Positions 18,558 to 56,633 of a stretch of DNA of 64,000 nucleotides are shown piece by piece. The notes under the pieces are model-generated. The model was not told the origin of the DNA and did not search any database. It saw only the letters and a list, made by a program, of their open reading frames with translations. The stretch is from contig CM119377.1 of the NCBI GenBank assembly GCA_051294905.1, forward strand, positions 2,728,001-2,792,000, read 5' to 3'. Position 1 is the first letter of the stretch, and the number at the start of each line of letters is the position of its first letter. The DNA comes from Botryllus schlosseri. Its lineage: Eukaryota. The translations under genes were made by a program, and so were the position numbers.

Positions 18558-21500
18558 ATGAAATTAAGATTGAGCGACAGTCATCATTTTGGTCTTCTTT
18601 TTCTGCTACTTGGTTTACAATGCTCTTCGCAAGATGATGGGATTTCAGTCTTATCTAGTGAATTGAGTGAGCTAGTAACCTGGGAGGGCTCCGCAGAACC
18701 TCCCGTCAACGAACTGAAATATTTTCTAAAGAAGAAGAAATGCTACTGGCAATGTAAATATACGATATATGCATTTTGCGATTGAAAATTAGGCCTAGCC
18801 ATCAAGCTTATTATCGATCTGTATATATCTTGATACGCATATTATAGCCACAATTTAATAGAATATAACGTGAATTACCACGTAGCCTAAATATTTTCAC
18901 AGTGCAGAGGAAGGCAATGTGTTGTTGTCTACATATACTATTAATGAGCTATATTGTACAATGTACAATTGTACAGCGTACAATATATAAACTACAAGAT
19001 GTATGGTAGCAATGGCCAGATTCCCCTCCTTATGTGGTGCAACGTAACTAGGAAATCATATTCAATTTATTAAGAATTTTTTCATCAATTCAAAACACCA
19101 CAAGACTGCGATACAACGAAAAGATAGGAAGGTGACGAAACGATTCGGAGTAGTCTTTGAAATCAGACACCCACCCGGGCATAGGCGATGTAAAGAGGAG
19201 GCATGCACATTGCACAGTGCACACTAAATGAAAAGTAAAAGAATATAATATAAAAAGACAAGCGACAAAATGAGGTGTTATGTGACGGAAGGCGAGATCG
19301 ATACGTCAGGTCGTGGTCCCGTAAACTTGCGGGCTGACTAGTATTGATTTAGTAGAAATTACTTGTATTCCGACTTGAATGGGGACACTGGACATGCTCG
19401 ATGACTGTCGGATAGCCGGCGAGATACTGTTCCACAAATTAGGTCCGGCATATTTGATATATATTGTTTGCTAGGACACCGGGTAGTGTTTCAATTTTAA
19501 GCAGGTGAAAGGTATTCCTCAGGCTATTGACTTCATTTACTGGCAGAACTACGCTAGCGCTAGTAATATCGGTCAACTTTATATCGAAGTCGACCAAGTA
19601 GGCCTATATGGTCTCAGGAGTTATCAGAACTCACAGTAAAGAGCCGCGTACTATCTAAAGTTGTGAATCGCGCTGCTGTATTTTGGATTACGACCAAATT
19701 GGGACTCGATACAAATGGGTTAACTACATATACTATCAGCAATAGGGCCCGAACGATTATATCGGTTCGCCAATTATATCGAGTCGATGTTACACTTTGA
19801 AAGAATTATCAGTATCGGCTATTGGAGGTGAAAAAATATAGGTAATTTTCGTGACGTCACAACATGATGGCAGGAAGTCAGAAAACTATAATTATAATCC
19901 TTGACCGCTAGACTGGGAATATTGCTATATTTCATGTTCAAGTATGACAATGGCTGTAAAGCTGTTGAAATAAATGCTCTGAAGTTTTGAAAATACACCT
20001 TTTAGGCAGATTCCACGTTATTTGGATATCGGCTGAATAGATGGGTTTTATCGGTATCGGCCTTAAAATCCAATATCGGTCGGGCTCTAATCAGCACAAC
20101 CCTGCAACGATCTGACCAGCCGAGCGATATCTTTCGATTTGAAGTGATTTTTATAATTATAAATGGTTATAACCTGCTTGGTACAAGACGACAGTGTCTG
20201 AAATGACAATGTTTTCAGACAAACATCTTTGTGACGTGCAATGTGATCAAGGGAAAATCCGTTACAGTGACAACTGCTGCTTGTGTGTCTGCAAGAAGAA
20301 TTACGCTTTGGTTCGCGATACACAATGTATTCGAGGTATTAGCGTATTACAATGTGACTGACTGACTATCCTACTCATTTGTGGTGGATTAAAATCGGCT
20401 CGAATTCGCAGCAAAATGGACGACATGGTCGTCTTGGAGTGGATGTCTCAAATCCAATTGGGGCGGTTTGCAGACTAGGGAGCGTGTGTGCAAGGCTGGT
20501 TCGTCGGTATCGGCCGGGGCGTGTGCAGGACGGGGCAGTGCGTCAAGAACCTGCGTACCGGTTACGAAGGGTAGACTATAGAACCATAGTATTGTCAACG
20601 ACGTTATGTGGAGACATATTCCAAGGCTATATGTAACTTATTAAAGCAACTTTACGTAGGCATGTTACTTCCCGAAAACGGCTCTGTGAGTGTTATTTAT
20701 TGTAAAATTACAGGTGCAATTATAGGATTACCTAACTTTTCGATTCTTTCTTGGAAGGGAAGCAGTGTTCCAAACGTTATTTTGCGACTAATTTTAATTT
20801 TTGTCATAATTATCATACTCGTTGACTAGAAGAGACACATACCGAACAATTATAATGGCAATAATGGCTAGGAGACGACGAGGGTACGCGAGGCCTTCAA
20901 AGTCTGTCGCCATTGCGTTTGCATATATTTTTATGTTAAAAGGTGCGGTAATATTCCATGCATCCAGGTTTTCGCATTCGCAAAAACGTCCGAGACTTAT
21001 CCGCGTATGAAATCCACGATCTAATCCAAGCCATGACGAAATTCAAGAAGGATTCTTCAAAAAATGGATACCGGGTAAGTAGCCTATATACTAAATCATG
21101 GACGGGCAACATACGACGAGATTTTGAGAGGTCCGCAGCAGAGAGTTTCTATCCTGAAAGTGAGATTATAATGTGAAAGTATTGACGAATTGATGCGTCA
21201 CAGAATGAATCCAAGTTTGCCAACTTGAGAAAGATGGTAATGAAAATACTTGTTCTGTTCGGGTCTACATAGCCTACACTACATTTATGAGCAAACATTT
21301 TCGACCATGATCACTAACAAGACAAGACTGCGTTCCAATATTACTGATGTTCACGTGCAGTCGAAGGGTTTACACGCTCGTCAATCAGCCAGAGTGCAGA
21401 GAGCTAGTTGATAACTTTGATCGATCACAGATGTCTCATTGAATTCAACAGCTACATTAGGTTTATAAATTCATCAAACACTGCTTTTGGTCTCTATGCT

Positions 21501-24500
21501 TCAAACATAAAGTTTACATTAAATCCGATTTATTCCTTATGTGCAGGTGGATAAATACGCGATTAATGTATCGATTCTGTAATCCGGCCCGCCAGGTACT
21601 TAGTTTTCCCAAATCAGGCCCGCCCCTAAACCAATGCCCTTCATAACAGATACTTTGGAGGGTGCGTCTCAAAGGTATATGAGTCCTGTTTTCCTTTTAG
21701 AATATTATATCGTGGCATGGATGGCCGGGTCGCTGTCCTTGGTATCATGAGGTTCACCACGATAACCATTGCAGTTGGCATCGACATCCGTTGTTTCTAC
21801 CTTGGCATCGACTTATCACGGTTCAACTTGAAGACGGTAAGTCATTAAATTATTATCACATTTTCGTTAATTCCCGGAGAGGATGAAGGAAGTTTCAATG
21901 AATAAGTTAAAACTCAAATATTACTCTATATATAACTGTCTATAATGAATTGATATTGAATAAGATTGTAATCCGGGATTGAAGTGTTCGATTATGGTCA
22001 GAATTCTTCACACAATCCATCTTATTCGTGGATGGGGGTATATTGATAGCATTACGAAATGCATGACTTCATTTGAGTCTTCTGTCTTCGATGTTTATAA
22101 TGCATCTTTATATTTATAAAACGTAAATATTGGATCGCTGATGACAGTTGTATGGTATGTGTTGCTATAGGCATAGTAGGTCCGATACCTATGATTCACT
22201 TCTTTTGAGCAGGGAAATAACCTAACTATAAGTCAGTCATTGTGACGAAATATCACTCAACTGATGTGCGGGATTTTGTACATGCTTTGCATGCTGTGCG
22301 GTTAATTCAGGCTTTAAGGCAGAGGTCTCAAACACGCGGCCCGCCAGAACATTTTGTGCGGCCCGCGACGACATTTTAGATTTTTACTAATTTGACAATA
22401 TATAAGTGTCACATATATCTTTTCAGGTTATAAAGTGAAAATGCCCTCTTAAATTACTCCGAAAGCCTCAAACTATTCATCAAACTTCACTATCACATCA
22501 ATTGCAAACGCTACCATGAAGTGGAAGATTCACTATTTCGCCAAATTTCCAATTCATGATGACAAATCGTGACCCTTAGACGATTCGTGACTGAAATTTG
22601 TGAGTTGGACTTAGGCGCGACCTTTCCTAAATTACTCAGACTCGGGCTAACTCGAGGGCAAAATGAAAATGACTCGAGTGGACTTGGAGTGACTCGGAAT
22701 GCCGTGAATTTGTTAGAACCATGGACGCAACAAACTAATCGCGTATCAGGGGAGTAATATATCAGAAGGTCGCAGCTTGGTATTTCGCTAACTAAGCAAG
22801 TTATTATGGCAACCATAGGCAATCTGTTAGTTACATCTCTGGTCGCTAAACCGTGTTATTAAGGCCACTTAAAGGTATCGAGTACCGTAGTGAGACGCTC
22901 CAACGATGTAACAGCAATGGGCCGTTCGGCGTTCCGACATTTCAATCAGTAGGACACATTCATTAATATATTTTTATTTTATTTATATTTTTTTCTGCTC
23001 CTATATTTGAAGATATGTGGCCATGAGATTAATAGCCTACTTATCAGAAGTATACCCGAATCATGGATTGGAATTACAATGCTCAAATTAAAAATGTTTT
23101 GATATCAGATCAGTCTCTATTATCAATCTGTTAAATTCAAAAAATTCATAGTAGCTGAAAAATAATAACCCGATAGCTTTTATGATGGTATCATACATTT
23201 GTCCGCCATACGGTGTCTATATATAATAATTATATATATATATATCAAGTACGACAGCAATTCTATTCAAATAGTTATAAATGTGAGGATTCTATTCGTG
23301 CCAGGCTTAAATTGATACAAGAGTACATCACATTTTGACGATGTGTGTTCACTGTCAGTCTGCTGGATCGGCTCACTTTCGATAGGACAATTCATTCCCG
23401 CAAAATAAGGCCTACTTGGAAAGACACAGAATACCCCCATAAATGCTGTGGCCCGCGGTGTTGTCAAAACTGGAAAACTGGCCCGTGAGCACATTTGAGT
23501 TTGAGACCTCTGCTTTAAGGAATCCACGAAAAAGTATAGAGACAATATATCTCGTTGATAATGTAATTCCTGGTGCAAAAATAACGAATAATTTCACACA
23601 CTCGAGTCGAATCATTACAATTAACACCGGGTTCGGATTCGAGAATCATTATGCTCAGCCCTAACCTTAAAACACGTCAGAAATTGATGTTGCTCGTACA
23701 GGTTTGTCTCGATATTTGCGCGACCAAACTATCGGCATACCATTTTGGGACTGGACGGAGACAGCGGACGATATTCCGTATTTGTTGCGAGATCGTAAAA
23801 TCTACGACCCGATTCTGAAAAAAGTAGTCGACAACCCGTTCCATAGCTCGTTTATTAAAACAAAACACGGAATACCCCTGTAAGTATAACCTCGGTATTG
23901 ATCATCAGGTTAGTTTGATAACTAACTTCTTTGGAAGCGCACAAAGCGACTCCGCTTAATTTGGAAACTTTGTTCCCGCTCACTTTTTTCAAATTTTACT
24001 GTCAACCTCATGAAATTCAGTTTTCTAAAAGAACGACGTAAAACAAATTTGATGCAATTCAAACCGGTAGAAGCGAAGTTATTTGAGTTGTTCATTCATA
24101 ATTCTGGGATCACCCACCGCCCAGGCTATTTTTGCGAATCCAAAATTTTCAACTGGAATAACTTCGCTTCTACCGGTTGGAAGTGAGCAAAATTATTGAT
24201 TATCATTAGGTTTTGCAGCTTTTGCAACTTTTTTACAGCTACCTGCAGCTTCCTTCATGCTCAGAAGTTATGCAGTTTCAAGCAGTTTGGAGGATTCTTA
24301 TATTGCAACTTTTCTCCACTCTTTGCATGCAACTTTTTTCGATTTTTCATGCAAATTTTTCCAAGATTTTTAGTTATTTTTCGTGCAACTAACTTTTTAC
24401 TGGAAATATGTGGCACTATATGTAAATATATTGCTTGATTATTTCACCGTCGTTTAAATTTGAGGTCCTTTCTGTTTTGACGTATATTCAGGCTAGACTG

Positions 24501-27500
24501 CCGAAAATCATATTTTCACTGGGTCAATTTTTTCAGGCTATTGTTTTTGTTGAAGTCGCCAACACCGAGTTTTGCTACAGTGCCTTGGATACGGATCGAT
24601 TCGAGTATCTCATACCCCAATAATTTCAAGGAACTTGTCCACAAATGCAACTTTTTAGTGCAACTTTGTGAAAAATAAATGTAACTTTTTGCAGCAACTT
24701 TTCTGAAATTCAAATGCATCTTTCCACGGATTTGATTGCAACAAAAACTAGCCCTAATAATAACGTAAGGTTGCGATTTTCAACTTATGTTTAATTCTAG
24801 TGGAAGTAGAAAATAGAAGGTCCAAAAGGTACCCAAGTAAGTATAGTTTCAAAATGTAGATGTCATCAATTGGGTGCATACTTTGAGCAGTTGATTGGAA
24901 GTGGCTAGTTTTAAAATTGCAAAATGCATCATTGCGACTAATGAAAAATGAAGAAGGAGACTAAAATAGGAGCAATATTCGAGAATATATCTCTTACTGT
25001 GATGTAGGGGTTATTTCAAACGCACGATGCGACTATTTCACTCATTATTATTATTATTATTAATGATGAGTTTTAAGTGGCGCGTGTCGCCGTTTCCGGC
25101 CTTGTGCACCACGGACAAAATATGTTATCAAGGATCGAGTTTTGGTGCTCTGGGACATAGGCTTATAATAAATTTCAAACTATATAAACTTTCAAACTAT
25201 ATATACAAGTTACATGCAATAATAAACTCGGCGACCGGCGTAAATAATTGCGGCATAGTAAGTAAATTGGTTAAAGTAAGCGGTACATTGAGCGTGGTAC
25301 ATGCGTCGGCAAGAAATGTTCGGTGAAAGTCGTATTTTTCGCAATGCAAGAGTATGCCTATTTCACTCATAAAATGAACGCAAACTCCTTGGAACTACTT
25401 ACTGCTAGCGGTATTGCCCGAAAATTGTTAAGTACAAGTTAAAGTATACCCCAATACACAACCACATTAGTAAGTTGCGTAAAGTAGACGAAACCTACTT
25501 GGGTATCCCGAGAATGTAAAAAATACTTAGTTACAGAACACCTCTGGTTTCCAGCTACACAACACGACTACCTTCGTATTCCGGCCTTCTGATGGACGCG
25601 TATCTCTTGAAGGGGACCGTCCGCGCGGTGCTTACTCGCAACTATTTCAATTTCGTGGAGCAGCTTTCAAAAAATCCCCACGACCAGGTATCTATAAGTA
25701 TCTATACATAATCGTGGATTCGTATTGAGAGAAACCGGTGTTGCGCTAGTTGTCAGGAACTACATTCAGATTTGAAAATGAGGTAGTATATAAAATATCG
25801 TATCACCAGTTTAGCAAAAGGCTAAAGAACCCTTGCTCGAAACGTTCAAATAGCAGAAAAGCATGATGTGAACAACACAATGTTTTCGTTTACCAGGAGT
25901 TCAGCGCCCGTAATTACTCAGGTGTGTAGCCTACTTTATACTGGTCTGCCGCACTGAGTTGCAGTCGAAAAAGGTTGGTGGCAATGAAGCGACAGAAACG
26001 ACATTTTGTAGTAGTAATAACATGCAATAGCTATAATCAGAAATGTCCAAGAGGGCGGGAGATCAAGTGACGACTTGATTGACGGGCCAATAAATATTGG
26101 CTGGAGCGTGTCGATTCCGGTGTTACCACGAAGGCAGATATCGGCGCCGTTATATCTAGACTATCGTAATTAGGGAATCGGATGTTTGGTTATGCCCTTA
26201 AAGTAAACTCACACTGAACGCTGCTGCCAGCGACCAGCATGCAAACCGCATGAATTCACCGCTTTACCGATCAAATGATCGGAAACTTGACAGTCTTCAA
26301 ACAATATACCAAATCACTAAAACTAGACGGTTGCTAATATAAATTACGTCTAGCAATTCGTAAGAGCGGCTATCAATATCCGTGTTAGGTGAAGTGCAGG
26401 TATATTCAGTACCCTAAAAGAGGACGTTTTTTGGCGGCAAGTCAAACGAAAGTAAAATTCTTACGTTTGAGCATTTCCTTTGTAGTCGCAGGCAAAAGTT
26501 ACAAAACAAAGCAAAACAAAAGCTATAAACAGACACAAAACAACAACTCAAATTGGTTTTTCAAATTCAGCCCAAAATACTTTGCGGATCCGTTTCGTTG
26601 ACCAATAACAGATGATCCTTTTTAATGAGTTCGTGAAATTGTTTACACGAAATATCATTGAAATTATATACAACTTCCCAAATGGTTGAAACTGGTCCAG
26701 CCCATAAGTATGTTAGGCTCGAACCAGCGCCAGAATATATGCGACAGATGCTCGTATGCAAAAAGGGCCACTTTTTACAGAGAACTGATACCGACATTGA
26801 TACCAACGCAAAAACAATCAATAACAATCAAGACGGTATAAGGCTGACAGGGTGATTTGTTGGAAAACGCGATTTTTAAATCAGCAATTCAGAGTGTTTT
26901 ATGGCTGCAGTAATTTTGTAAATAAATAGAACGCCTTGCCTAAAAGTCTCGTTGAAAGTATAATAAGAAAGTAACTCAAAATCTGAAAGAAATAGGACAT
27001 CTGGGCATTTTAGGGCACTCGGAAGGTCATTCACTTTTCTTGAGGAAAAGATAACGAAGCCTCCTAAAAGATGACATATGGAAGAGATGGGGCTATATAC
27101 TGGTATAATAGCCTACATACGTGTGTCACCGTTACGTTACGACAAGGATTATTCGTCGTGCTAGAATTTTGTGTTCATATATTGTCTTTTCCCCCGATGA
27201 TCTTACTTGAAGCAGGGGCAGCTGTGATTTTAAAAATTACAGCCTGATCGCAATCTTCATATTTATTTTACACTCTTGGGCTCAAGTTCACGGAACCAAA
27301 ATAAATGTCACCGTCAATAATCGCGATTACATTATTATCCATGTAGTCGTAATGGTAATCGAATAATGTGAGATTAAGCTGTAATTCTAATCGTGTGTTT
27401 CGGAAGTAATCTTAATCGTAATCGATTAAATTGATGCACTAATCGTCGCATGTCCGGATTGTAAGCTACTAAATACATATCTCGAATATCCAAAAAGAAG

Positions 27501-29637
27501 AGAGATAATGGACGCATAGAGTTGGGATCGGAAATGTCGTTAAGAATATAGATTTGTTAACTTTTCCTATATTATTTGGCCATATCATTCTCAGATCCAC
27601 AACTGTTTTTGCTGGAGCAACGAAACCGTACTCGGCCAGTATCGTTGTCACTACAGCATCCTATCGCCCAAGTACGCTTCGTACGATCCGGCCTTTATGC
27701 TTCACCACAGCGCTGTCGACAGGCTGTTCGTGATGAGGCGAACTTTGGAGGAAGAAGCGGGAATATCGGACTGGACGTCGAGCAGTGTTGCTGGAAATTG
27801 CGCAAAGGTAAATTCAGAATGCACACCACCGCCCAATTGAGTATGCTACTGCCGCATGTAAACATATTTACGTGGCCAATTAGTTTTAGCCACTAAGCGT
27901 AGGCGGGACAGGAATTTGAGTTTGCAAGAAATCAGCCATATACGCGGCATTACAAAAAAGGCTAAACTACTTTTTTTTTTAAACTTTGGATTCTGTGAAT
28001 AGGAAATAGTCTCGGAATATGTTTGCATCACTGCTATATGGATGAACTTTCATGATAACTGGCCGAAATAGGCTAGAATTACAGTAATTGGATATTCCAC
28101 CTCTAATTAACTGTCAAAACTACACGACTCGTCGAGCAAGTTTACATTTTCAAACCACTTACTTGGGTACTTTCGAGACCTTGATTTTCTACTTCCGTTT
28201 GAAGTAGTGTTGACATGTCTTGGGAATCGCTACTTGTTCTTCCAATTGAGTAGAAAAGGACTACTTCTACTTGACCAAATATAAAACATGACAAGTACGT
28301 ACTGTTTCGAGAACCGCAGAAGTGGAAGTCGTCTAAAAGCGATCGCTTCGAATGAGTATAGTGCGAGTAGAAAACTATTCTCGATTACCAATAAAAGAAA
28401 AAGTATTTCGTTACGTAACACCTCTGCGACATATATTGGACCATGACCTCACGCGTTTTAAAGTATAGTCTCCCAAGTCCCCGTCAGTACCAAATACTGG
28501 TTGGAGATGCGATGTGGGCAGTAGGGATGGTGTGAACCTCTGAAAGGTTCAGGTTTGTGTGAACGCGAACCTTTTTGAAAGGTTCTGTGTGGACGCGAAC
28601 GTGAACCTCATGACGTCTCGTGACGTCATATTGACACGTAATATTTATGACCGCGATATAATTCAGATTTAGGTTCTGTTTCCGTGTAACACTCTTTGGT
28701 TGTGAAAATGCACACTTGTTTCGCTGAGAGTGTAGGTTCTATACAGCCGTTTCACGAAGTTTTACGATATCATCTAACCGACTAGCATTACTGGTTATTG
28801 TCAATGACGTTTTGTATCAGGATTGGCTGAGAATATATGACTTTGTGACAGCTAAGATCAGTAATTTTTTAAAAATCTTATCACGGGATAGAAGATGCCC
28901 AAATAAGTCTTTGAGTTGATAAATTGATATCTGCGGCGGATATTATCTAAAGCAGAGTTTTTTCAACTTTTTTGATTGGGGAACCCTCCAAGTTTTGTGG
29001 GCGATGGAAAAAATTCACCAGACCAATATCAACTCTATTCCATGCCTAAAATAAGCTCATAATAACTAGACAAGGTAGTCACAATCCTACGCATGGCGTC
29101 ATTGCCAAAAAGACAATCAATCTAGTTTAGTAGTTTCTTGATAATGTAATTGACCATTGCCCTTCACGAACCTCCTAAAACTAGTTCACGGACCGCTAAA
29201 GGGACCCCAGTTTAAGAACCTCTGATCTATAGCATTCTATATATGCGAAACAGGGAATGGAGAAGTTGGGTATGGGTGTGACAAGCGACATTTCAAGATC
29301 CTTCCGGTGGCCCATGTCTCCCTTCTGCAACAAAACCATGAACCCGAACCCGCTCACGAACGGATACGAACGCTCCACGACGCACAAGTCGTACTACGAG
29401 TCTCAGCTGTTCGGTTACAAATACAGCAACTTCAATATCGGCGGAAAGTATTCTTGGGAAGATTTGAAAGCTGATTATAAGAAACTGGTAGTTGATTCCA
29501 AATTTTGGAACGACGAATACTTTGAGACTAAGATTGGCCTGCTGTATGCGGAGAATTCGAAAGACTTGGAATTAACGTGGGGTTGCGCTATTGATTATTA
29601 TAATCCTCCGTTTAATATGTCGATATCATGGAACTAA
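18558..29637 (+). CDS. Secreted Cys-rich module + TSP1 + type-3 copper (tyrosinase/hemocyanin-FU-like) protein, copy 1, about 511 aa
   Basis: Exons 18558-18666 (signal peptide; least certain), 20219-20335 (Cys-rich), 20412-20570 (TSP1), 20968-21074, 21701-21836 (CuA: WHGWPGRCP...HCSWHRHPLFLPWHR), 23702-23879 (GIPFWDW), 25555-25687 (...PHDQ), 27595-27807 (IH...YDPAFMLHH), 29254-29637. Total 1536 nt, all GT-AG, no internal stop. Confidence 0.85.
19061..19341 (+). mobile_element. Family L interspersed repeat, probable non-autonomous Helitron
   Basis: 3' hairpin CCCGTAAACTTGCGGG (19318-19333) followed by CTAG|T; homologs at 52297-52560, 57393-57642, split copy 39453-40230, partial copies near 31190-31370 and 50810-50910. 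Confidence 0.55.
19743..20089. mobile_element. hAT-type MITE family J
   Basis: TIR TAGGGCCCGA...TCGGGCTCTA; TSD ATCAGCAA/ATCAGCAC. Confidence 0.75.
22320..23512 (+). mobile_element. hAT-Charlie-like non-autonomous element F (1.2 kb)
   Basis: Ends CAGAGGTCTCAAACACGCGGCCCGC...GAGTTTGAGACCTCTG; perfect 8-bp TSD CTTTAAGG; full-length homolog at 59674-60889. Confidence 0.88.
24207..24756. mobile_element. MITE family E
   Basis: Reverse-orientation homolog of 34317-34860; ends ...AAACTAGCCCTA. Confidence 0.75.
28522..28700. mobile_element. Terminus of the TAGGGATGGTGTGAAC element family
   Basis: Same terminus and subterminal repeats as 640-776; right boundary approximate. Confidence 0.45.
28953..29224. 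mobile_element. Charlie-like MITE
   Basis: CAGAGTTTTTTCAAC...TTAAGAACCTCTG; TSD ATCTAAAG/ATCTATAG. Confidence 0.7.
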
Positions 29638-30837: not shown

Positions 30838-33800
30838 ATGAAAGTTATATCACCAGTAGTAGTCTGTGTCGCGGTGGCAAGTCTGGTAACACCAATCAGG
30901 GCAGAGGCAGTAAAAGGCGAGATTCACGATAGAGTAAGATCATTTTTTAATCGAGTCTTCGATGATGACTTATCGCCTGGATACAACGTTGTTTTTCGCT
31001 ACAAAGGTGGGTCTTAGAACTGTACAGAATAGCCGCTGTATGTATGTGTATTGTGTACAACTGTACATTGTACAATCCTTAGGCTTAGATGATAGATATA
31101 GGCCTACGTTCGGTTCGGAGCAATGGCGAGATAGCGTTGTGGTATAATCCACAGCTGCAACACCAATGGGTTGCGGGTTCGACATAAATGCTGTCTCATT
31201 GTGTCATTTGCTCCTTTTGTTATCTTATATTTCTGTGTCTCTATACACACCCTGGGCCCATGAGAGTCTGATTTCAAAGACTACTCCTCGTTTCGACACA
31301 TTCGTACTATCTTTTCATTGTATCGCAATCTCGTGGTGCATTAATCTGAAAAAATTGTTAATATTAAACTAAACCGAACTATCTGTGATAATGTTGCGCA
31401 TGAATTTTAGTAGTGACACTACCGTAGGCCTACTAGTTGAACTAAGATATTCAGCGATGCTAATTTCAAAGGGCTACGCTACAGTAGGCCTACTGCACAC
31501 TTGTACATTTCCAGGCCAGGCGCTTTTTAATTTATATAAATCTTTGAGAAAAGATTTGCTCATCTTATAAACGTTTGGAGGTCGATTACAGACGGGGAGA
31601 GGTTCATTACTGTTACGAGCCGATATGACTATTGAAACTCCTCGTATAGACATGCAATGAAAACGTCAAATCTGCATTGTATCCCTGTTCATTCTCTCAT
31701 ATAGCTGTTACTCAATTTCCTGAGATTTCAACCCGTAATATGATACTTCTATCGGTATATAAATTACGAGTGTGCGTTATGGGTTAGCATATCAGTGTCG
31801 AGGATACAGTAGGCTACTATTGGCTGTGCACTGTGCAGTGCATGTGCAATGATGATCTCTCACTCTAATACTCGGTTAAAGTTTGACTGCATCCTGACCT
31901 TATGTGATTTAGTTGCGCTCATCCACTTCGAGTGATTGCATTATTATCATACGATTACGTGTACCAAAACATAATTCCGCATAGAGCATGTGTGAGTGTG
32001 TTACATGTGCGTTTGATTCGTTACATGCTTCCAAAGCCCGAAAAACGGCCGAAAAATCATCAACAACACTCATGCGACTATCACGCGACTATACTCATGC
32101 TGTATTCTTTGATATAGAATGCGAGATAACATAGGGATAAACAGCGGCTAAAATATTGCAATCGTCTTAAGGTTCGACTGTTTGCGCTTGGAAATGTGAA
32201 CAGGGAACTATATATTACCCGGACAGCTCATGCAAATGCGTGTGTAGGAAGAACTATGCGCTGCAGTTTAACACTCGATGCCAACGAGGTACGTGTTTAC
32301 ATGGCATTACCATTAGGGTTGCATTTAAAACAAAAATCAATTTAAAACAAACATGTTCAAAACATGGCCCTTGTTCAAAACATGTTTATTATTGTTTTTT
32401 ATTTGTTTTTTAGCAATGACGTCACAATGTATTGGCATTGACAATCGAAAATATAGGGTAAATATGACTCCTTTGACGGCAAAGGCTTCCGACCACTGTC
32501 ATGAACAGACCAAAAATATCTTTAACCAGGACTACATCGTTATGCAGCATTTTTACGGTTGGCGGTCTTCATCATCAGAACACCCATTCCGTAGCCTACC
32601 AATGATCTATATCTGCATGCTATAACTGTTGAACCGACGACGATTTCGAGGGTTCCAGCCACCCCACATCGTATACGTCGACTAATTTGAGTGCAAACGT
32701 CCGTAGGCTCATGCTACATGTTTTAGCGCGAGTATTTACACAATTATGGCATAATTAGACAACGTTTGAAAAAAAATGTTTTAAAAAAAGGCATTTGTTG
32801 TTTATAACATATTTTAAACAAATTGTTTTCAAACAAAGTTTGTTTTAAATGCAACCCTAATTACAATACTGATATATAATGTAAATATTAATCAGTAATA
32901 ACTCTATTCAACTTTGTTCGGGCTCCATAACTACGTAACTTCTTCTTTCATTTACTTGTGTCGAGCGTGAATGTCAGATTAGCATGCATACAGGCCTCTG
33001 GATTTCTTTGCGCAGGTCATCGCGTAGAAAAGAGGACATTTGCCGATATAATATAATTTAAAAACGACAATCATCAGTCACACTCCCGGTGCATTTAGGC
33101 AATACTATACTTTCCCCGGAAGTTGACCTGATGGCTTGCGCATCCGTCTGATTCCAATCGATGCTTTCAGGGGTTCTCTATATACTGGTATACAGATTGC
33201 GATTCCCTATAAGCCTATATGCTCATGCGAACTTACTGAACTCCATATAGTCACTCTACACAATAGCCTACTCCATGCACACAATTATGCATGCATACGG
33301 ATTTCGAAAGAATACACATACGCAATGAACCTCAGACTTAGGCCTACATTCGATTCATTCATTCATTCATACATACATACATACACAGTACACACGTATA
33401 ATAGAAACATATTTCAATTTTCATACGATCGCAGCGAAGATTATATCGGAGTAGAATTCTTTATATATATCTGCATGACTGCATCACTATAGCTTAATTT
33501 AATTTGTTAAATATGTCTAAATTGATGATAATATACAATATTATTGGCATACGTAATGCTTAATAAATGGATCTTTGGCATATTTCTTCTATTGATCAAA
33601 GTCGTTGGCCCATACATACAGGGATATCCCTGAGTTATATATATCCCTTGAGAACGTATATTTTGGTGTATTATATATTTTGATACAATTGTTTCGTTGA
33701 CAAGTGTACAAGATTTTTTAGTCAAATTTACCGGCCCAAAATTTCTTCCATACCGCGTTGGGACTATTATATCGAGTTAAATGTGTTCACAATTTAGCCT

Positions 33801-48800: not shown

Positions 48801-49051
48801 ATATCGTAATGGTGAAGCGTCCGGCTTCTTGATCGGTAGGTCGTGGGTTCGATCCCCGGCCGGGTCAGACCAAAGACCTGATTAGTAACAATGGTATCCA
48901 TGACTTTCCTGCTTAGCGCTCATGCATTAATGGGATGACATGGATCCGGAGGGGTGGTCCAAGACTTAGATAGCCGTAAAAGGCTATATCTGCACCTTCC
49001 TTGTCCAGCGGCATATGCACATCATGAACTCATGGTATGCATATGCAGAGA

Positions 49052-49093
<42 letters not shown>

Positions 49094-50044: not shown

Positions 50045-50224
50045 CTCGACAGCCAGACCCTAACAGCATCAGCTAACACCTACGCCCATCCGATATCCGG
50101 TTTTTTAATCACATTCGACTAAGCATAAACATACGCGTAGATCATTAGGTGGTTGATTAGTCGTTGATGAATTCCACGTATATAGGCTATATGCTTCCAT
50201 ATATTTCCATACATTCACAGCACA

Positions 50225-53200
50225 ATGTGTCGACGGAGCGCCGCTGGACTTGTTTTGCTGACCTTACTAGTATGGAAGAGCAGGGCGGATAGAGTAGAGC
50301 GAATTAACGATAGTACAAGGTTGTTTTTCAGCCACGTATTCGATGATAGCGTCAAGGCAGCTTACAGCGTCGCATTCGATTATAGAGGTTCGTTTAAGAC
50401 ATACGGCCATACAGCCATTGCTGAGCACATTTGAATGTCAACGTATATAGATTGTTTACGAGAAAATGAAATGCGTGCGGTCGACTCCACTTAATTCGGA
50501 CACCTGGCAAGCCCTCTATTCGGCTAAAATGCCCAGGACCGGAACAAATGTGAAAATAACACGTGAAACCTTCGGTTAATTCGGGCCGTTCTCCGCTTAA
50601 TTCGGACACATGCTCGCAATTTCTGTCGTTAGGTTATGAGACAATAAGCAAACTTCGTTTTAACACAAGATGAGTGATTATAGTGGAATGATGACGATCA
50701 ATGCAGTAACCATCGCCGTGACAGCTGCATCTTAGCATTAAATTAGGCACAATTGCGTCCATCCGGTAGAACAGAGTGCTTGGTACAGCAAAGTTGAGCA
50801 GAAAATGTGGAATTGATTTCAAAGACTACTCCAAGTCGTTTGGAAACCTTCATATCCTTTCATTGTATCACAGTTTTGTGGTGTTTTGAAATGATGAAAA
50901 TATTAATAAACTGGTACTTCTTATGAAAGTAAACGAAGGAAAAAGCAAAGACGCTCTCTTGACAGTTGAGCAGTTAGTTGCGTTGGTGGAGATATCAAAA
51001 AGTATTATTGTGTGACACAGTAATAACGTAGCCAATACAATAGGCCTATATGTTGATTGGTTTGGTATATAAAATACAGCACGATACAACTAACCTGAAG
51101 CTATAACTGATGTGTATTTTATGCGATTTGTGCCAATTATTGCAGTATAGCACAGCTGTAATCAATGTATTACACGCAGCAGCATTTTGAAAGTGTTATG
51201 TGCTGCCTTCACACGTGATCATGAAGTCAACCATTGATTTTCCGATTAACGCGGACAAAACCATTTCTCTGCCTAATTCGGCGAAAAGTGAGCGGAACAA
51301 AACTGTCCAAATTAAGCGTGGTCGATTGTCTACAATTGAAAAATATATACAAATAAACCCGCATATTTTCGGCTATGGTAGGGAATTGAGTAGAACATTT
51401 GAAATAAAAATTTCGAAAATTCGAATATTAATTCTTTTCTAGTGGGTGGCGAATAATCCTTATCGGTGTTAGCCGAACATATTCTGGTTTCAACATGCAT
51501 TTTTTAAATTAGAGAAATCACGAGGCAGTTAGCTTCATAACTGCTAAAACTTCACGACTCACATAAACAGAAATGCTGTCTTGAGATGAAATATTCTACT
51601 GTGCAAACTCATTTTAATTGCCAAATTGCCAATAGCCTACTGATACAAACATATTGCTGTTTAGAGATGTATTGTTTGGGATTTGGAAAAAATTGCTTCA
51701 AAAATGCATTTCTCCTGTGATGCATAACCGCTACTCCAGAATAACTTCAAGATGAGCTGCTAGATAGAAATGACTATATGCTGGACGTTACATGTTCACT
51801 AAAGATCTGTTCCTCAATTTTGGTGTCAGATATGTTCCGATCGTACCCAGAGGTGTCGTGGGAGGCGTTGCGCGTTATTATCGCATTCACCACCACCTAC
51901 ATTATTCAATAGTATATTATAGCCATGTAACTACAAGAGTCTCTTTAAAACGAAATACATAATACACCTAAAGCAACTGTAGTATTGTACCGTTCACAGC
52001 TCAACCCTAATTGATCGAGGCTGCGGGATGCTGGCCGAGACTGACTCCAGAAAGGAATACACATATAACGTTATTCAACAGTCATATTTCATCCCGGATT
52101 GTCACGATTATTTTGTTAGCTCGCATCCGAAAATCAATCCACGATCTTCGAGCTATCACGAACAAATTCTTTTAGCCTTTTATGCTTAACAAGTGAGACG
52201 CAGGCGCACTCACCTGATTTGGATAACGAGTCACAGCGTGAGAGTGCGATACCAATCAGTAATCAATCTCGACCAAATTTATTGTATGTAGTGGTGTTCG
52301 GTTTATTAGCACTTTTTATCAGTTCAATACACCACAAAATTGCGATACAGTGAAAAGATAGGAAGGCGTCGAAACGACTTGGAGTAGTCTTTGAAATCAA
52401 CCACCCACCTTGGCCTATAGGCGACGTAAAGAGGAAGCATGCACACTGAATGAAAAGTATACGATAATATAAAAAGCAAGCGACAAAAACGAGGTGATAT
52501 GTCACGGAAGGCGAGATCGATAGGTCAGGTCGTGGTCCAGTAATCATGAGGACGGACTAGTATTCATTCAGTACTGTACGTACAATGCGGATAGACTGCG
52601 GAATTAGATCAAAGAAACATTTCATAAAATTGATCAGAATTAAATTTCAATCAATCCAGGTTCGACCATTTGCATACGGAAGTGTCAACACGGTACGATA
52701 TTCTACCCAGACGGTACATGCAAATGCATTTGCAGGAAGAACTATTCGTTACAGGATAATATCAGATGCGCGCGAGGCAAGCTGTTACACCTCATCTATA
52801 CTATATCGTCTCATATTAATCATATACATTATTTAGCTTCGTGGTCAAGATGGAGCTCTTGGACTAAGTGCTTGACATCGCACTGGGGCGGCCTCCAACT
52901 CAGAGAACGGGTTTGTAAAGCAGGAGAAATCGATGCAGCTGGCTCTTGCAGTGGTAGAGGGAGCGCGGCGAGAACTTGCAATCGCATTACCAAAGGTTCA
53001 CGGTCTTCCACACGATATCACGCATTCGTTACCTTGTATGACCTTGCTGTTTCGTTTAGAGTTCAAAATACGTAAAAACGTTAACGACTTGACCGCTGAC
53101 GAATTACACGATATACTGCAGGCCATGACAAAGTTTAAAAAGGATACATCGAAGATGGGATATCGGGTAAATTTGAAAACAGTCAATGCAACTTGTCATG

Positions 53201-56200
53201 TTCCATATTTCCCTTATGGGGCACAGCGAATATTGTATATGCTTTTTAAATATAAGTCGGTGGCTACAGAAATTATTTACTGATATATAATTCGGATATA
53301 CTCATGGCCTACTAGTAGGACATGCTTAAAATTTATCCAAGTGACCAGAACGTGACAAACCGAATCGTCAGCATTGACTCCAGGATTAGAATGTGCGGAA
53401 TCTATTCAACCCTGACGTGACGCAGTTGCCAAAAATGGCGTCGAAGTGTGTATGTCTAAGTTACAGTGACTCTTTACGCGTACTAGCGATGACAGGGCAC
53501 ACCAGCATATTGATTGAGATCACCGTTAGAATCTGATGAGAACACCGAATACTTTTTATAACGCGATATCTCATTCTCGGTTAAATTATAGAATATCATA
53601 TCCTGGCATGGCTATCCCGGACGATGTCCATGGTACTACAATATCAAAAAGCACAAAGATAACCATTGCAGTTGGCATCATCACCCGATGTTTCAGCCTT
53701 GGCACAGATTGATAGCAGTTCAATTGGAAATTGGTAAAGACCTCTTTTTTCAAATATTAGCAAATTGGTATCTAAATCGTTGGGACGAGGCCTACATAAT
53801 GTTTCCAGCATCCTATTCCACTATTGACAGCGTTAAACCAGTATCCGCATTATTAGGCCTGTATTCATTATGATTTATTCGATTTTTGAGATTTATGCAG
53901 ATTTCAGGAACACTTCCGTCATTAGCATATAGCGTATACTTCTCGTCCTCAAATCTCAGGTCTTTCACGCTATCTCAAAAATAAAACCCTGGGAATTCCC
54001 TACTGGGATTGGACGACGCACGCGACTGATATTCCGTATCTACTGAGACTTCCGAAAATTTACGATCCAATATTGAGGAAACGCGTTGTAAATCCGTTTC
54101 ACAGAAACTTCATAAAAATGTGGCATGGCGTGAAACTGTAAGTATATAACGCATTCTTCCATACCTATTAATCCGAGGTGGCCAAAGTAGTCAGAATTAA
54201 CGTTGCAAATTTATACTCAAGTACAAGTATAAGTATCAATTTCCATGTAAGTATTCAGAAAAACAAGTATTCAAGACCTATATATAGTTTGCCCGAGAAA
54301 TGAAATCTGTTAAGTTGAATTAGAAGTAATACAAGAAGTCAAAACCTACTTGAATATTGCAATTAGAAGTGCAACAGTGGATGGTGGGATTTAAAGTAGA
54401 TTAGGCTACTCCTTTGTTCATACATCGTAAAACAACAAAGCTGTATTTGAGTGCGTACTGTGCAGCCTATATGATATTCGTCACATTCGAATCTACCTTT
54501 GGATTTCAGCTTTCTGAAATTTCGATATTTTTATGTTTGGAAATCAATAAACAAATGAGTTATAAATTCACCGAATTGTTCTAATCGATGACAATGAGAA
54601 TATACTACGGGACAATTTGTTAAAAATAGATCTAAATCGGAACGGATATTCGAATTACATTGGACAGATGACATGCTCATGGCTGCTGGTTATGAAAAAC
54701 TGAATCGTTCACAACACCACATATGCTATATTATGCCAAACGTTCAGGTACAACCAACGGAAGCCGGTGTACACAGGAGTGCTAATGGACCGGTACCTTC
54801 TGAAAGGTGTCGTCAGAGCGATGATGTGTCACGATTATTACGAATACGATCAACAGCAGTCTGTCATTCCTCACGATCAGGTTAGGTCTGCTTACTTGGG
54901 CTACGCCGCTAATGCTTGGCGGGTAATTTCAATATCGCCAACAGAACACGCAAATGTTTAACATAACTTCGAAACCGACTTCGTGAATGATCAAGATCGT
55001 TAGTAACGTATTCGACTCGACCTGTCATGTATAATGCAACTCGTGTACCACCTCGGCTCAGATAGGCCTACGGCACGGATCACATCGTAGTTTAACCAGC
55101 CTGCAATATATCTGCTCCTTGGGATAAACCAAATATCTTGATGAATACCGACGTATATAAGCTGAAACTGAAATACAGCACTTTTTGGTACAGTATATGT
55201 ACATTGTACATGCACAATCTGACGTCTAACAGGCCTACCTTACAATTAAACGCAATTTAAAGCGCTTTGGCGATACTTTAAAGAACAACTTGCGGTAACT
55301 TCACAAATAAACTGAACCAAACTTCACATGGACCAAACTAGTATACTAACGCATCATGACGGCTGTTGCGCGGATGGGTGAAAGAGTGTAAAGCGTTGAT
55401 TACCTTACCATGCGAGAGGAAATGTAATCAAAAAGGATACATGTATCATACGAGCGATAATTGCTCATCCGCGACATCCCCGTTGGAAAATTAATTTAAA
55501 TGATTATGTATAGAATGCAGACATAGGCCTACTAACACCGATTTTGTGTAACATGTCATAATTCGTATAATACATTATTATTCTAGATACACAATTGCTT
55601 CTGTATCGGAAAAATGCTACTTGGACAATCCGTGTGTGATTATGGCATGCCCACAGTGGATTACGCTGCATGGGATCCGGCGTTCATGCTACATCACAGT
55701 GCGATGGACAGGTTATTCGTGATAAGAAGAGAGCTCGAGGAACTGCATGGCGTTGCGGACTGGACAAAGAGCAGAGTCATCGGGCAATATGTGAAGGTCA
55801 TATAGTTATTTGTATTGCATATCATGTAAGCAGAAGTGTCAGTGAAGTGTCAAACTATTTAGCGTTATTACTTACTTTCTACCCTACAAAATATGAAGTG
55901 TAAAAAGTAGTATGTAGTTTTGGCTAAAACAATTGAGTGGAAATGGAAATAACTAATTGGATACGCACCGCAAGTAGGCAAAACCTGAGGCTACTTCGAA
56001 AGCGTCGAAGTAGGCTACTTCGTCACTGATCATATCTGGATGCATGAGACACACAGCGCCGTAACACCAAATATTTCACGGAAGGTTGATGCTCATTGCT
56101 CATGTCGGAATATAGTTTCAAACCACGCCATGCTACCTAGCAAACTGAAAGAAGGGCTTTGATATTACCGTAATTCACCCAGATACCGCTACCATGTCGA

Positions 56201-56633
56201 ATAATAAAGTAGCCTACTTGATACAGCAACAGCGGAAGCAAAACAATAGTATTTTCGTGCTCAGGCAAAGGGTAACGCACGGGATATATCACAAGCATTC
56301 GACTGGCCGCTTTCGCCGTTTTGCAACAGCAGCATGAATTCAGAACCAGTGACAGGGAGAAAGGGGGTCTGGACTATGCACAACGCTTACTATAACGGAC
56401 AACTTTTCGGATATAAGTACGACAACTACGATTTCGGCCACAACTACAAATGGGAGGATTTGAAGAGAGATTTCGAAGGGAACGTCGTGAAGAGGGCGTT
56501 TTGGAACGATGACTTTTTCGTGACAAAGCTGGGAAGCTTAACGGCCGCAAATTCACGACTTTTGCCGAGGACAAGCGGATGCGCTTTCCATTATTCAAAT
56601 CCCGTGTGGAATATCAGGATCCAGTGGAATTGA
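50225..56633 (+). CDS. Secreted TSP1 + type-3 copper (tyrosinase/hemocyanin-FU-like) protein, copy 3, 486 aa
   Basis: Exons 50225-50387 (MCRRSAAGLVLLTLLVWKSRA signal), 52837-52995 (TSP1), 53060-53166, 53592-53733 (CuA), 53960-54137, 54748-54880, 55587-55796 (CuB), 56265-56633. Total 1461 nt; exons 2-8 have the same lengths as in copy 2. Confidence 0.92.
52297..52560 (+). mobile_element. Family L repeat (probable Helitron)
   Basis: TTCGGTTTATT...GGACGGACTAG|T; homolog of 19061-19341. Confidence 0.55.

What the first reader, a model, noticed from the sequence alone, without database searches (positions are those of the whole stretch)
18558..56633. Tandem array of three secreted TSP1-fused, hemocyanin-unit-like dicopper proteins
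Seen: three head-to-tail intact genes with shared intron positions and phases, each encoding signal peptide + one TSP1 repeat + a type-3 copper domain (R-K-N-x-x-D-L start, WHG.P.RCP, FxPWHR, PYWDW or PFWDW, PHDQIH, DPAFMxHH, PxxPF, FGYKY). Copies 2 and 3 are closest (57/70 identical residues in the CuB exon); copy 1 is older. Established: this motif order resembles a molluscan hemocyanin functional unit or secreted tyrosinase rather than the arthropod-type phenoloxidase or the membrane TYR/TYRP enzymes; TSP1 repeats bind matrix and glycans. Inference: a matrix-anchored catechol/DOPA oxidase family for cross-linking a tunic, cuticle, adhesive or wound clot, or for immune melanisation. I know of no characterised TSP1-hemocyanin-unit fusion, although automated 'hemocyanin-like' annotations may exist.
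Basis: partly seen in the sequence, partly recalled or inferred. Interest (0 to 1): 0.85.

Follow-up and report, generated by a model that had tools for sequence, protein, structure and literature searches.

The report
Three tandem ascidian TSP1-tyrosinase (Tuphoxin-like) genes
The window holds three intact, tandemly duplicated sea-squirt genes for secreted copper phenol oxidases that carry a thrombospondin repeat; the genes are real, but this protein type was already published in 2022 under the name Tuphoxin, so they are new members of a known family.

Summary
Three head-to-tail genes on the + strand (18558-29637, 30838-41987, 50225-56633) each have 9 coding exons with identical phases and encode proteins of 511-525 aa. 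Copies 2 and 3 are 72% identical, are sisters in the tree, and have dN/dS of 0.06. Copy 1 is older.

The copper domain is closest to molluscan hemocyanin functional units by both sequence and fold.

The novelty claim fails. The nearest full-length relatives are ascidian proteins (Styela clava, Ciona, Phallusia, Clavelina), auto-named "hemocyanin-like", with the same architecture. Daugavet et al. 2022 (Sci Rep 12:14326) described this EGF-TSP1-alpha-tyrosinase architecture as "Tuphoxin". They found the protein in morula blood cells and proposed that it is secreted into the tunic. They called the TSP1 fusion a tunicate innovation and proposed tunic sclerotisation as its role.

The window genes look like the shorter, uncharacterised sister clade. 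They lack the cupredoxin-like C-terminal domain and have HCSWH where Tuphoxin and hemocyanin have CCxH.

Verdict: new members of a known kind, low interest. Enzyme activity is still unproven for the whole family.

The parts
18558..29637 (+). Gene copy 1 (c1), 9 coding exons, 511 aa
   Evidence: Spliced model. It is 55-58% identical to c2 and c3. The exon 1 donor and exon 9 acceptor are uncertain.
18558..18666 (+). c1 exon 1: start codon and signal-peptide-like N-terminus
   Evidence: The hydrophobic core has a Kyte-Doolittle score of 2.76. Donor 18666 was chosen by phase; 18657 is also possible.
20219..20335 (+). c1 exon 2: Cys-rich EGF-like module (7 Cys)
   Evidence: tblastn with c2 exon 2, E 3e-9; splice sites.
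20412..20570 (+). c1 exon 3: TSP1 repeat
   Evidence: PF00090, 21.1 bits, E 3.5e-4.
20968..21074 (+). c1 exon 4: start of the tyrosinase domain (RKNVRDL...GYR)
21701..21836 (+). c1 exon 5: CuA site (WHG, HCSWH, PWHR)
23702..23879 (+). c1 exon 6: PFWDW region
25555..25687 (+). c1 exon 7: ends at PHDQ (first CuB histidine)
27595..27807 (+). c1 exon 8: IHNCF...DPAFMLHH (second and third CuB histidines)
29254..29637 (+). c1 exon 9: end of the alpha domain (PMSPF, FGYKY), short tail and stop
   Evidence: Acceptor 29233 has the better pyrimidine tract and would add 7 aa.
30838..41987 (+). Gene copy 2 (c2), 9 coding exons, 525 aa
   Evidence: Spliced model. It is 72% identical to c3.
30838..31006 (+). 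c2 exon 1: signal-peptide-like N-terminus plus about 30 aa conserved with c3
32172..32288 (+). c2 exon 2: Cys-rich EGF-like module (6 Cys)
33798..33956 (+). c2 exon 3: TSP1 repeat
   Evidence: PF00090, 19.9 bits, E 8.6e-4.
35385..35491 (+). c2 exon 4: start of the tyrosinase domain
35926..36067 (+). c2 exon 5: CuA site
37314..37491 (+). c2 exon 6: PYWDW region
40308..40440 (+). c2 exon 7: ends at PHDQ
41045..41248 (+). c2 exon 8: second and third CuB histidines
41619..41987 (+). c2 exon 9: end of the alpha domain, tail and stop
50225..56633 (+). Gene copy 3 (c3), 9 coding exons, 523 aa, the most compact copy
   Evidence: Spliced model.
50225..50387 (+). c3 exon 1: signal-peptide-like N-terminus
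52660..52776 (+). c3 exon 2: Cys-rich EGF-like module. It is followed by a 60-nt in-frame intron with a GC donor, which may be retained.
52837..52995 (+). c3 exon 3: TSP1 repeat
   Evidence: PF00090, 24.0 bits, E 4.4e-5, above the 21.6-bit cut-off.
53060..53166 (+). c3 exon 4: start of the tyrosinase domain (after a 64-nt intron)
53592..53733 (+). c3 exon 5: CuA site
   Evidence: This exon hits only molluscan hemocyanins in the PDB.
53960..54137 (+). c3 exon 6: PYWDW region
   Evidence: PF00264, E 0.0036.
54748..54880 (+). c3 exon 7: ends at PHDQ
55587..55790 (+). c3 exon 8: second and third CuB histidines
   Evidence: PF00264, E 1.2e-6. Single hemocyanin units are the best PDB hits at E down to 1.8e-8; the best tyrosinase/polyphenol oxidase hit is E 0.027.
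56265..56633 (+). c3 exon 9: end of the alpha domain, about 70-aa tail and stop
   Evidence: This exon was the query.

Best explanation
These are three tandem paralogues of the tunicate-specific family of secreted alpha-class type-3 copper proteins that carry an EGF-like module and one TSP1 repeat N-terminal to a tyrosinase domain resembling a molluscan hemocyanin unit. Members of this family were published as Tuphoxin and its homologues.

Shown here: the genes are intact; all six copper-ligand histidines are present; the N-termini look like signal peptides and there is no membrane anchor; the genes are under purifying selection; and their nearest relatives are ascidian proteins with the same architecture and the same intron positions.

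Inferred mechanism: the protein is secreted and binds two copper ions that activate O2. It then oxidises catechols (and possibly phenols) to o-quinones, which cross-link or tan matrix proteins or kill invaders. By analogy with Tuphoxin, the secreting cells would be morula blood cells and the destination the tunic. The TSP1 repeat and the EGF-like module would tether or target the enzyme to the extracellular matrix.

The window genes appear to belong to the shorter sister clade of the characterised Tuphoxins. They have no cupredoxin-like C-terminal domain and no Cys at the thioether position. Their active site is therefore probably not capped by a C-terminal domain, which fits an enzyme rather than an oxygen carrier.
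For: Gene models with identical phases and no internal stops, and only three copies in the window.

Domain hits: TSP_1 and Tyrosinase Pfam hits on single exons.

Nearest solved relatives: the CuA and CuB exons, and the full-length homologue P0011, match molluscan hemocyanin units best. Single units score E 1e-24, against 1e-11 for bacterial tyrosinases. The AlphaFold model of P0011 also hits hemocyanin units first, at E 7e-16.

Ascidian relatives: the full-length homologues are all ascidian. Pfam finds Tyrosinase in all 11 scanned and TSP_1 in 9 of them, usually with a weak cEGF hit as well.

Tree: the window genes, three Styela clava proteins and one transcript-like sequence form a clade at 100/100, and c2+c3 are sisters at 100/100.

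Gene structure: intron positions coincide with those of the annotated Ciona genes.

Transcript-like support: homologue P0010 lies on a 2731-nt contig with an uninterrupted ORF that joins the EGF-like, TSP1 and tyrosinase parts.

Selection: dN/dS for c2-c3 is 0.06.

Localisation features: the N-termini are hydrophobic and no later 19-aa window exceeds a hydropathy of 0.9.

Literature: Tuphoxin has the same architecture, is found in morula cells and among tunic proteins, and its tyrosinase domain clusters with mollusc hemocyanins. TSP1 joined to tyrosinase is found only in tunicates, and there are two tunicate clades, one without the cupredoxin-like region (PMC9395347).
Against: No expression data for these three genes could be consulted, so which copies are transcribed, and in which cells, is unknown.

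Phenol oxidase activity has not been demonstrated biochemically for any member of the family. The published paper itself says 'putative'.

The characterised Tuphoxins appear to belong to the other paralogous clade (CCYHG motif, long C-terminus). Transferring their localisation and function to the window genes is therefore an extrapolation.

The TSP1 repeat is degenerate: it has 4 Cys, and two of the three copies fall just under Pfam's cut-off. Its matrix-binding role is only assumed.

SignalP was not available, so the signal peptides are judged from hydropathy and sequence pattern only.

My spliced window proteins could not be submitted to the search tools as single sequences. Domain evidence for them therefore comes exon by exon and from homologues.
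Confidence: 0.75

Rival explanations
1. The family has the same identity, but its main job is monophenolase action on protein-bound tyrosine. It would make DOPA or TOPA residues in tunic or adhesive proteins or in tunichrome precursors, rather than oxidising free catechols to quinones for cross-linking.
For: All six histidines are present, and the fold and sequence are tyrosinase-like. There is no C-terminal capping domain, so bulky substrates could reach the site. Ascidians make DOPA/TOPA-rich and halogenated-DOPA proteins and tunichromes (PMC13079984; the titles listed).
Against: Sequence cannot separate tyrosinase activity from catechol oxidase activity, and the Tuphoxin authors say the same. 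The residue after the first CuB histidine is Asp (PHDQIH). No substrate data exist.
Confidence: 0.12
2. A non-catalytic matrix, adhesion or pattern-recognition protein in which the copper domain serves only as a scaffold or binding module.
For: EGF-like and TSP1 modules are typical of matrix and recognition proteins. Earlier notes report degenerate tyrosinase-like domains that have lost their histidines elsewhere in this genome (unchecked).
Against: All six copper histidines and the flanking motifs are invariant across the 12 aligned ascidian homologues, and all are also present in the three window copies. Purifying selection is strong.
Confidence: 0.05
3. An oxygen-binding or oxygen-storage protein, that is, a true hemocyanin as the automatic names suggest.
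For: The nearest solved relatives are molluscan hemocyanin units. Public names read 'hemocyanin ... -like'.
Against: There is a single unit of about 520 aa, not a chain of 7-8 units. There is no beta-sandwich domain to shield the site, because the alignment to hemocyanin units ends at the alpha domain. The thioether Cys position holds Ser. The characterised relatives are products of blood cells that reach the tunic, not plasma oxygen carriers.
Confidence: 0.03
4. A gene-model artefact: the TSP1 and EGF-like exons belong to other transcripts and are not spliced to the copper exons.
For: No RNA data for this genome were available. Copy 3 needs a GC donor and two very short introns of 60 and 64 nt.
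Against: The order and phases are the same in all three copies. The junctions match those in annotated Ciona genes. A related species has an intron-free contig that joins all the parts. There is also published cDNA and peptide evidence.
Confidence: 0.02

Closest known systems
Tuphoxin (Styela rustica, S. canopus, Halocynthia aurantium; Daugavet et al. 2022, Sci Rep 12:14326, PMC9395347)
   Same: It is ascidian. It has EGF-like module(s), then one TSP1 repeat, then an alpha-class tyrosinase domain with six histidines that is most similar to molluscan hemocyanin. The TSP1 repeat shares the W..W..W...C....WGGLQ.R.R.CK pattern seen in Hau_Tuph1. The S. canopus transcript has a predicted secretory signal. 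The proposed role is matrix-tethered phenol oxidase in the tunic.
   Different: The characterised Tuphoxins have GCCYHG at CuA, where the window genes have HCSWH. They have SHN.IH where the window genes have PHDQIH. Hau_Tuph1 (756 aa) also carries a cupredoxin-like C-terminal domain. The window proteins stop about 70 aa after FGYKY at 511-525 aa. They therefore look like the paper's second tunicate clade, the one without the cupredoxin-like region. I did not build a joint tree with the Tuphoxin sequences.
Ascidian proteins auto-named 'hemocyanin ... -like' (Styela clava P0002, P0009, P0011; Ciona intestinalis P0012, P0013, P0016-P0019; Phallusia P0014; Clavelina P0015)
   Same: They are 40-55% identical over nearly the full length. 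The domain order is the same, the HCSWH, PHDQIH (HxQ.H) and FGYKY motifs are shared, the length is about 490-565 aa, and the Ciona genes have the same intron positions.
   Different: The two Ciona paralogues I checked are not in tandem within 10 kb. Here three copies lie within 38 kb, and the c2/c3 duplication is specific to this lineage.
Molluscan hemocyanin functional unit (e.g. 1JS8, 1LNL, 3L6W)
   Same: It is the best match by sequence and by fold for the copper alpha domain. It shares the CuA and CuB spacing, the PxxPF and FxYxYD motifs, and the Cys of ...RCP... together with the first Cys of the CC pair.
   Different: The window genes encode one unit, not a string of 7-8. They have no beta-sandwich domain. 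Ser sits at the position of the Cys that forms the Cys-His thioether in hemocyanin. That assignment combines the alignment with my recollection that the thioether Cys lies two residues before the histidine. The window genes also have EGF-like and TSP1 modules, which hemocyanins lack.
Other secreted alpha-class tyrosinases with accessory modules (nematode ShK-tyrosinases, molluscan CBM_14-tyrosinases)
   Same: Each is a secreted type-3 copper domain fused to a small extracellular binding module.
   Different: The accessory module differs. No large Atlas cluster near this family combines Tyrosinase with TSP_1, in line with the paper's statement that the TSP1 fusion is restricted to tunicates.

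Membership tests
Tunicate TSP1-alpha-tyrosinase family (Tuphoxin and homologues) | Tyrosinase (PF00264) domain with all six copper-ligand histidines | tested here: met
   WHG, CSWH, PWHR, PHDQIH and HHS are present in c1-c3. Exons 6 and 8 hit PF00264. Full-length homologues score 68-94 bits.
Tunicate TSP1-alpha-tyrosinase family (Tuphoxin and homologues) | One TSP1 repeat directly N-terminal to the tyrosinase domain in the same reading frame | tested here: met
   The exon 3 to exon 4 junction is phase 1 in all copies. PF00090 scores 24.0 bits for c3 (above the cut-off), 21.1 for c1 and 19.9 for c2 (just below the 21.6 cut-off). The same junction occurs in the Ciona genes and on the intron-free contig L001.
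Tunicate TSP1-alpha-tyrosinase family (Tuphoxin and homologues) | EGF-like module(s) upstream of the TSP1 repeat | tested here: inconclusive
   Exon 2 has 6-7 Cys and the pattern C.C.C(K/R)(K/R)NY.L.....C, but it gives no Pfam hit on its own. The aligned region of the Ciona, Phallusia and Clavelina proteins hits cEGF (PF12662) at 17-26 bits, below the cut-off.
Tunicate TSP1-alpha-tyrosinase family (Tuphoxin and homologues) | N-terminal signal peptide, no membrane anchor | tested here: inconclusive
   The N-terminal cores are hydrophobic (10-aa hydropathy 2.8-3.0) and are followed by small residues. No later 19-aa window exceeds 0.9. No dedicated signal-peptide predictor was available.
Tunicate TSP1-alpha-tyrosinase family (Tuphoxin and homologues) | Copper domain closer to molluscan hemocyanin units than to other type-3 copper proteins | tested here: met
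   sequence; fold.
Tunicate TSP1-alpha-tyrosinase family (Tuphoxin and homologues) | Nearest relatives are ascidian proteins with the same architecture | tested here: met
Tuphoxin proper (the clade of Sru_Tuph, Sca_Tuph, Hau_Tuph) | Cupredoxin-like C-terminal region after the alpha domain | tested here: not met
   The window proteins end about 70 aa after FGYKY at a stop conserved in all three copies. The alignment of homologue P0011 to hemocyanin units stops at unit residue 283. Hau_Tuph1 runs to 756 aa and has a CuOx region.
Tuphoxin proper (the clade of Sru_Tuph, Sca_Tuph, Hau_Tuph) | CCxH motif at the second CuA histidine (Cys available for a Cys-His thioether) | tested here: not met
   The window genes and all 12 homologues have H-C-S-W-H. 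In gap-free alignments to hemocyanin the Ser lies under the second Cys. Sru, Sca and Hau Tuphoxins have GCCYHG or ACCYHG.
Tuphoxin proper (the clade of Sru_Tuph, Sca_Tuph, Hau_Tuph) | Made in morula blood cells and released into the tunic | not testable with these tools
   This needs expression or antibody data for this species.
Molluscan hemocyanin | Polypeptide of 7-8 concatenated functional units, each an alpha domain plus a beta-sandwich domain | tested here: not met
   There is a single copper domain per gene, separate genes have their own signal exons, and there is no beta domain.
TSP1 repeat (PF00090, canonical six-Cys form) | Trp ladder W..W..W, Arg layer, and six Cys forming three disulfides, with a C..(S/T)C..G O-fucosylation site | tested here: not met
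   The Trp ladder and R.R are present, but there are only four Cys. C-L-(K/R/T)-S-x-W-G-G replaces C-S-x-T-C-G-x-G, so one Cys pair and the fucosylation motif are absent. The canonical pattern is from my own knowledge. The repeat is still recognisable as a TSP1-type repeat.
[quoted passage not shown] 2013, PMC3658974) | Secretory signal, no transmembrane region, no gamma-type architecture | tested here: met
   with the caveat above about signal-peptide prediction.

The most novel reading that the evidence does not exclude
The short clade to which these genes belong may be a functionally separate enzyme from the characterised Tuphoxins. Its distinguishing features are no cupredoxin-like cap, Ser at the thioether position, the invariant His-rich H-C-S-W-H-x-H segment at CuA, and a four-Cys TSP1. 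It could be a constitutively open oxidase that acts on bulky matrix-bound substrates, for example hydroxylating or oxidising peptidyl Tyr/DOPA in tunic or holdfast proteins. Its tandem expansion in this lineage would then reflect specialisation of tunic or adhesive chemistry.
Probability: 0.2. Interest if true: 0.5.

Novelty: new member of a known kind. Interest (0 to 1): 0.2.

Why it matters
The value is mainly in annotation. In public records these genes' relatives are called 'hemocyanin-like', which is misleading. They are single-unit, secreted, TSP1-bearing alpha-tyrosinases of a tunicate-specific family.

The window adds three things to the published picture. First, it gives a clean genomic picture of the short clade: 9 exons, intron positions shared with Ciona, and a recent tandem duplication under strong constraint. 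Second, it shows that the thioether Cys and the cupredoxin-like cap are both missing in this clade. Third, it shows that the TSP1 repeat has lost one disulfide pair.

No member of the family has been shown to be an active enzyme. These compact genes would therefore be convenient candidates for the first biochemical test, and that test bears on how ascidians harden the tunic and make DOPA-based adhesives.

Tried and rejected
- The exhaustive search of 1.84 billion representatives with c3 exon 9 gave only 8 hits, and only one was full length. The last exon is lineage-specific, so it could not sample molluscan or other outgroups.
- Searching again with a profile of the 12 ascidian proteins returned the same 12. 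I therefore have no outgroup-rooted tree, and no joint tree with the published Tuphoxins, whose sequences I saw only as text in a supplement.
- The Atlas look-up with a single exon returned chance hits to glycogen synthases and was discarded.
- P0002 has no contig on record. The contig carrying P0001 could not be read.
- The species of the window, and of runs SRR32906208 and SRR25569784, could not be identified.
All Pfam and PDB tests on them were therefore done exon by exon, and the structure was predicted for the Styela clava homologue P0011 instead. That model has a mean pLDDT of only 61.6 and is good enough for fold assignment only.
- I considered a fourth copy or pseudogene fragments in the window and found none.
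- I considered further 3' exons encoding a cupredoxin-like domain. I rejected this because coding conservation runs up to a stop at the same position in all three copies, and c2 starts only 1.2 kb after the stop of c1.
- I considered conserved tandem arrays in Ciona. None was seen within 10 kb of the two paralogues checked.

Full report
**Observation**

Aligning the three sets showed where similarity ends. I then chose splice sites that keep the frame and fall at the same place in all copies.

The resulting models have 9 coding exons each. The start phases are 0,1,1,1,0,1,2,0,0 in all three. Exons 2, 3, 4, 6 and 7 have identical lengths (117, 159, 107, 178, 133 nt). There are no internal stops, and the stop codon follows the same ...WN. 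The products are 511 aa (c1, 18558-29637), 525 aa (c2, 30838-41987) and 523 aa (c3, 50225-56633).

tblastn of c3 against the window finds these three copies and nothing else. Between c2 and c3, nucleotide similarity of 75-83% is confined to the exons.

Identities are 72% for c2-c3, 54.5% for c1-c2 and 58% for c1-c3. For c2-c3, dN is 0.17 and dS is near saturation, giving omega 0.06. For pairs involving c1, dS is saturated.

**Corrections to the observation**

It is present in all copies; in c1 it was found by tblastn at 20227-20334, E 3e-9.
- In c3 the intron after this exon is 60 nt long, in frame, free of stops, and starts with GC. It may be spliced as a GC-AG intron or retained, which would add 20 aa.
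- The exon 1 donor of c1 (18666 or 18657) is ambiguous. So is its exon 9 acceptor: 29254 is used here, and 29233 has the better pyrimidine tract.

**What the parts are**

- *TSP1 repeat.* Exon 3 hits Pfam TSP_1 at 24.0 bits in c3 (cut-off 21.6), 21.1 in c1 and 19.9 in c2. The repeat keeps the W..W..W ladder and R.R, but it has only four Cys and lacks the C..(S/T)C..G motif. From what I know of canonical repeats, this corresponds to the loss of one disulfide pair and of the O-fucosylation site.
- *Tyrosinase domain.* Exons 6 and 8 hit Pfam Tyrosinase.
- *PDB matches.* The CuB exon matches single molluscan hemocyanin units at E down to 1.8e-8, against 0.027 at best for tyrosinases and polyphenol oxidases. 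The CuA exon matches only hemocyanins. The last exon gives marginal hits to hemocyanin around the P..PF and F.Y.YD motifs.
- *Histidines.* All six copper-ligand histidines are present in every copy.
- *Localisation features.* The N-termini have hydrophobic cores typical of signal peptides, and no later segment looks membrane-spanning. No dedicated signal-peptide predictor was available.

**Relatives**

An exhaustive search with c3 exon 9 gave 8 hits, one of them full length: P0002, 533 aa. Using P0002 as query returned 12 proteins, all from ascidians: Styela clava, Ciona intestinalis, Phallusia mammillata, Clavelina lepadiformis and one unnamed run. Their automatic names are of the type 'hemocyanin, beta-C chain unit D-like'.

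Pfam finds Tyrosinase in all 11 of these that I scanned and TSP_1 in 9 of them, usually with a weak cEGF hit just upstream. The alignment shows the same Cys-rich module, the same TSP1 pattern and the same copper motifs as in the window. The window proteins are 52-55% identical to the Styela clava proteins and 41-46% identical to the Ciona, Phallusia and Clavelina proteins.

In a maximum-likelihood tree, c1, c2, c3, the three Styela clava proteins and P0010 form one clade (100/100). Within it, c2+c3 are sisters (100/100) and the rest is unresolved. The host of the window is therefore most likely a stolidobranch ascidian, but I could not name it.

**Support for the splicing**

- The exon boundaries of two annotated Ciona genes (P0016 on L002, P0018 on L003) map onto c3 residues 94/147, 183/230, 230/289, 290/334, 334/402 and 401. 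These positions coincide with the c3 exon ends at 93.3, 146.3, 182, 229.3, 288.7, 333 and 401.
- P0010 lies on a 2731-nt contig with one uninterrupted ORF that runs through the EGF-like, TSP1 and tyrosinase parts. The contig behaves like a processed transcript.
- Published cDNA and peptide data exist for the family.

**Literature**

A full-text search found Daugavet et al. [quoted passage not shown] The paper describes Tuphoxin in Styela rustica, S. canopus and Halocynthia aurantium, with the following points.

- The architecture is two Ca-binding EGF-like domains (predicted in S. canopus), one TSP1 repeat, an alpha-type tyrosinase domain, and in Halocynthia a cupredoxin-like C-terminal domain. 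A signal peptide is predicted for the S. canopus transcript.
- The protein is found in morula cells and is proposed to be released into the tunic.
- The tyrosinase domain clusters with mollusc hemocyanins.
- There are two tunicate clades, and only one has cupredoxin-like sequences.
- The proposed role is tunic sclerotisation, with TSP1 binding the matrix.

No later paper mentioning Tuphoxin is in the library. Aguilera et al. 2013 (PMC3658974) defined the alpha, beta and gamma subclasses but does not mention TSP1.

**Where the window genes sit in that picture**

The supplement of the paper prints parts of the Tuphoxin sequences. They have GCCYHG or ACCYHG at CuA and SHN.IH at CuB, and Hau_Tuph1 has a long C-terminus (756 aa).

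The window genes and all 12 database homologues instead have the invariant H-C-S-W-H at CuA and H.Q.H (PHDQIH in the window) at CuB, and they end at 490-565 aa. In gap-free alignments to hemocyanin units, the window Cys lies under the first Cys of the hemocyanin CC pair. Ser lies under the second Cys, which, as far as I know, is the one that forms the thioether to the histidine two residues on.

The alignment of homologue P0011 to hemocyanin units ends at unit residue 283, which is the end of the alpha domain. An AlphaFold model of P0011 is of modest quality (mean pLDDT 61.6, pTM 0.68). It nevertheless hits hemocyanin units first (E 7e-16 to 1e-10), then bacterial and fungal tyrosinases.

I therefore place the window genes in the clade without the cupredoxin-like region. 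This is a paralogue group of the characterised Tuphoxins for which there is no protein-level work. The placement rests on motifs and length, not on a joint tree.

**Mechanism**

Shown: the genes are intact and under constraint, they have secretory-type N-termini, and they have a complete binuclear copper site, a TSP1-type repeat and an EGF-like module.

Inferred: the secreted protein binds two coppers and uses O2 to oxidise catechols, and possibly phenols, to quinones that cross-link matrix or act in defence. The small N-terminal modules would tether or target it. The lack of a C-terminal capping domain would leave the site open.

Sequence cannot tell tyrosinase from catechol oxidase, and activity has not been shown for any family member.

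**Genomic context**

The two Ciona paralogues I checked have no tyrosinase neighbour within 10 kb. The three-gene array, and in particular the c2/c3 duplication, therefore appears to be specific to this lineage.

**Verdict**

The functional idea is reasonable but already published, and the novelty claim is wrong. These are new members of a known kind, of low interest beyond annotation and as convenient candidates for the first enzymatic test of the family.

Noticed in passing
window 58727-59317 (-) and 63092-63688 (-): Two single-ORF genes of 196 and 198 aa on the minus strand downstream of copy 3. Both hit Pfam Mpv17_PMP22 (E 8e-14 and 3e-13), so they look like a second tandem pair of apparently intron-free genes.
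   Followed up: partly
window 10053-11318 (-): A 421-aa open reading frame upstream of the array with no credible Pfam match (best E 0.027). It could be a gene, a mobile-element remnant or chance.
   Followed up: partly
window 43808-44042 and 48824-49065: Two copies, 90-92% identical, of an interspersed element in the 8-kb spacer between copies 2 and 3. Its start resembles a tRNA T-arm (GGTTCGATTCCCGGCCGGG), which suggests a tRNA-derived SINE. ARAGORN calls no tRNA in the window. A (GT)n run follows the second copy near 49.05-49.09 kb.
   Followed up: partly
window 32457-32776 and 37760-38074; 19079-19354 and 52313-52573; 24516-24719 and 34329-34523: Other interspersed repeats, 85-88% identical, shared between introns of the three genes. 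They lie in non-homologous introns, so they are insertions and not remains of the duplication.
   Followed up: no
Rfam finds nothing in the whole window at gathering score, and nothing in 38300-38900 at E up to 1. This does not exclude a minimal motif, but it gives it no support.
   Followed up: partly
window 52777-52836 and 52996-53059: Copy 3 has two very short introns (60 and 64 nt) flanking the TSP1 exon. The first has a GC donor and is in frame, so retaining it would insert 20 aa between the EGF-like module and the TSP1 repeat.
   Followed up: partly
P0001 (Logan run SRR25569784): A 140-aa ORF from a 1.6-kb contig is about 93% identical to exon 9 of copy 1, including residues upstream of my chosen acceptor. 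It probably comes from genomic DNA of the same or a sister species. The contig could not be read.
   Followed up: partly
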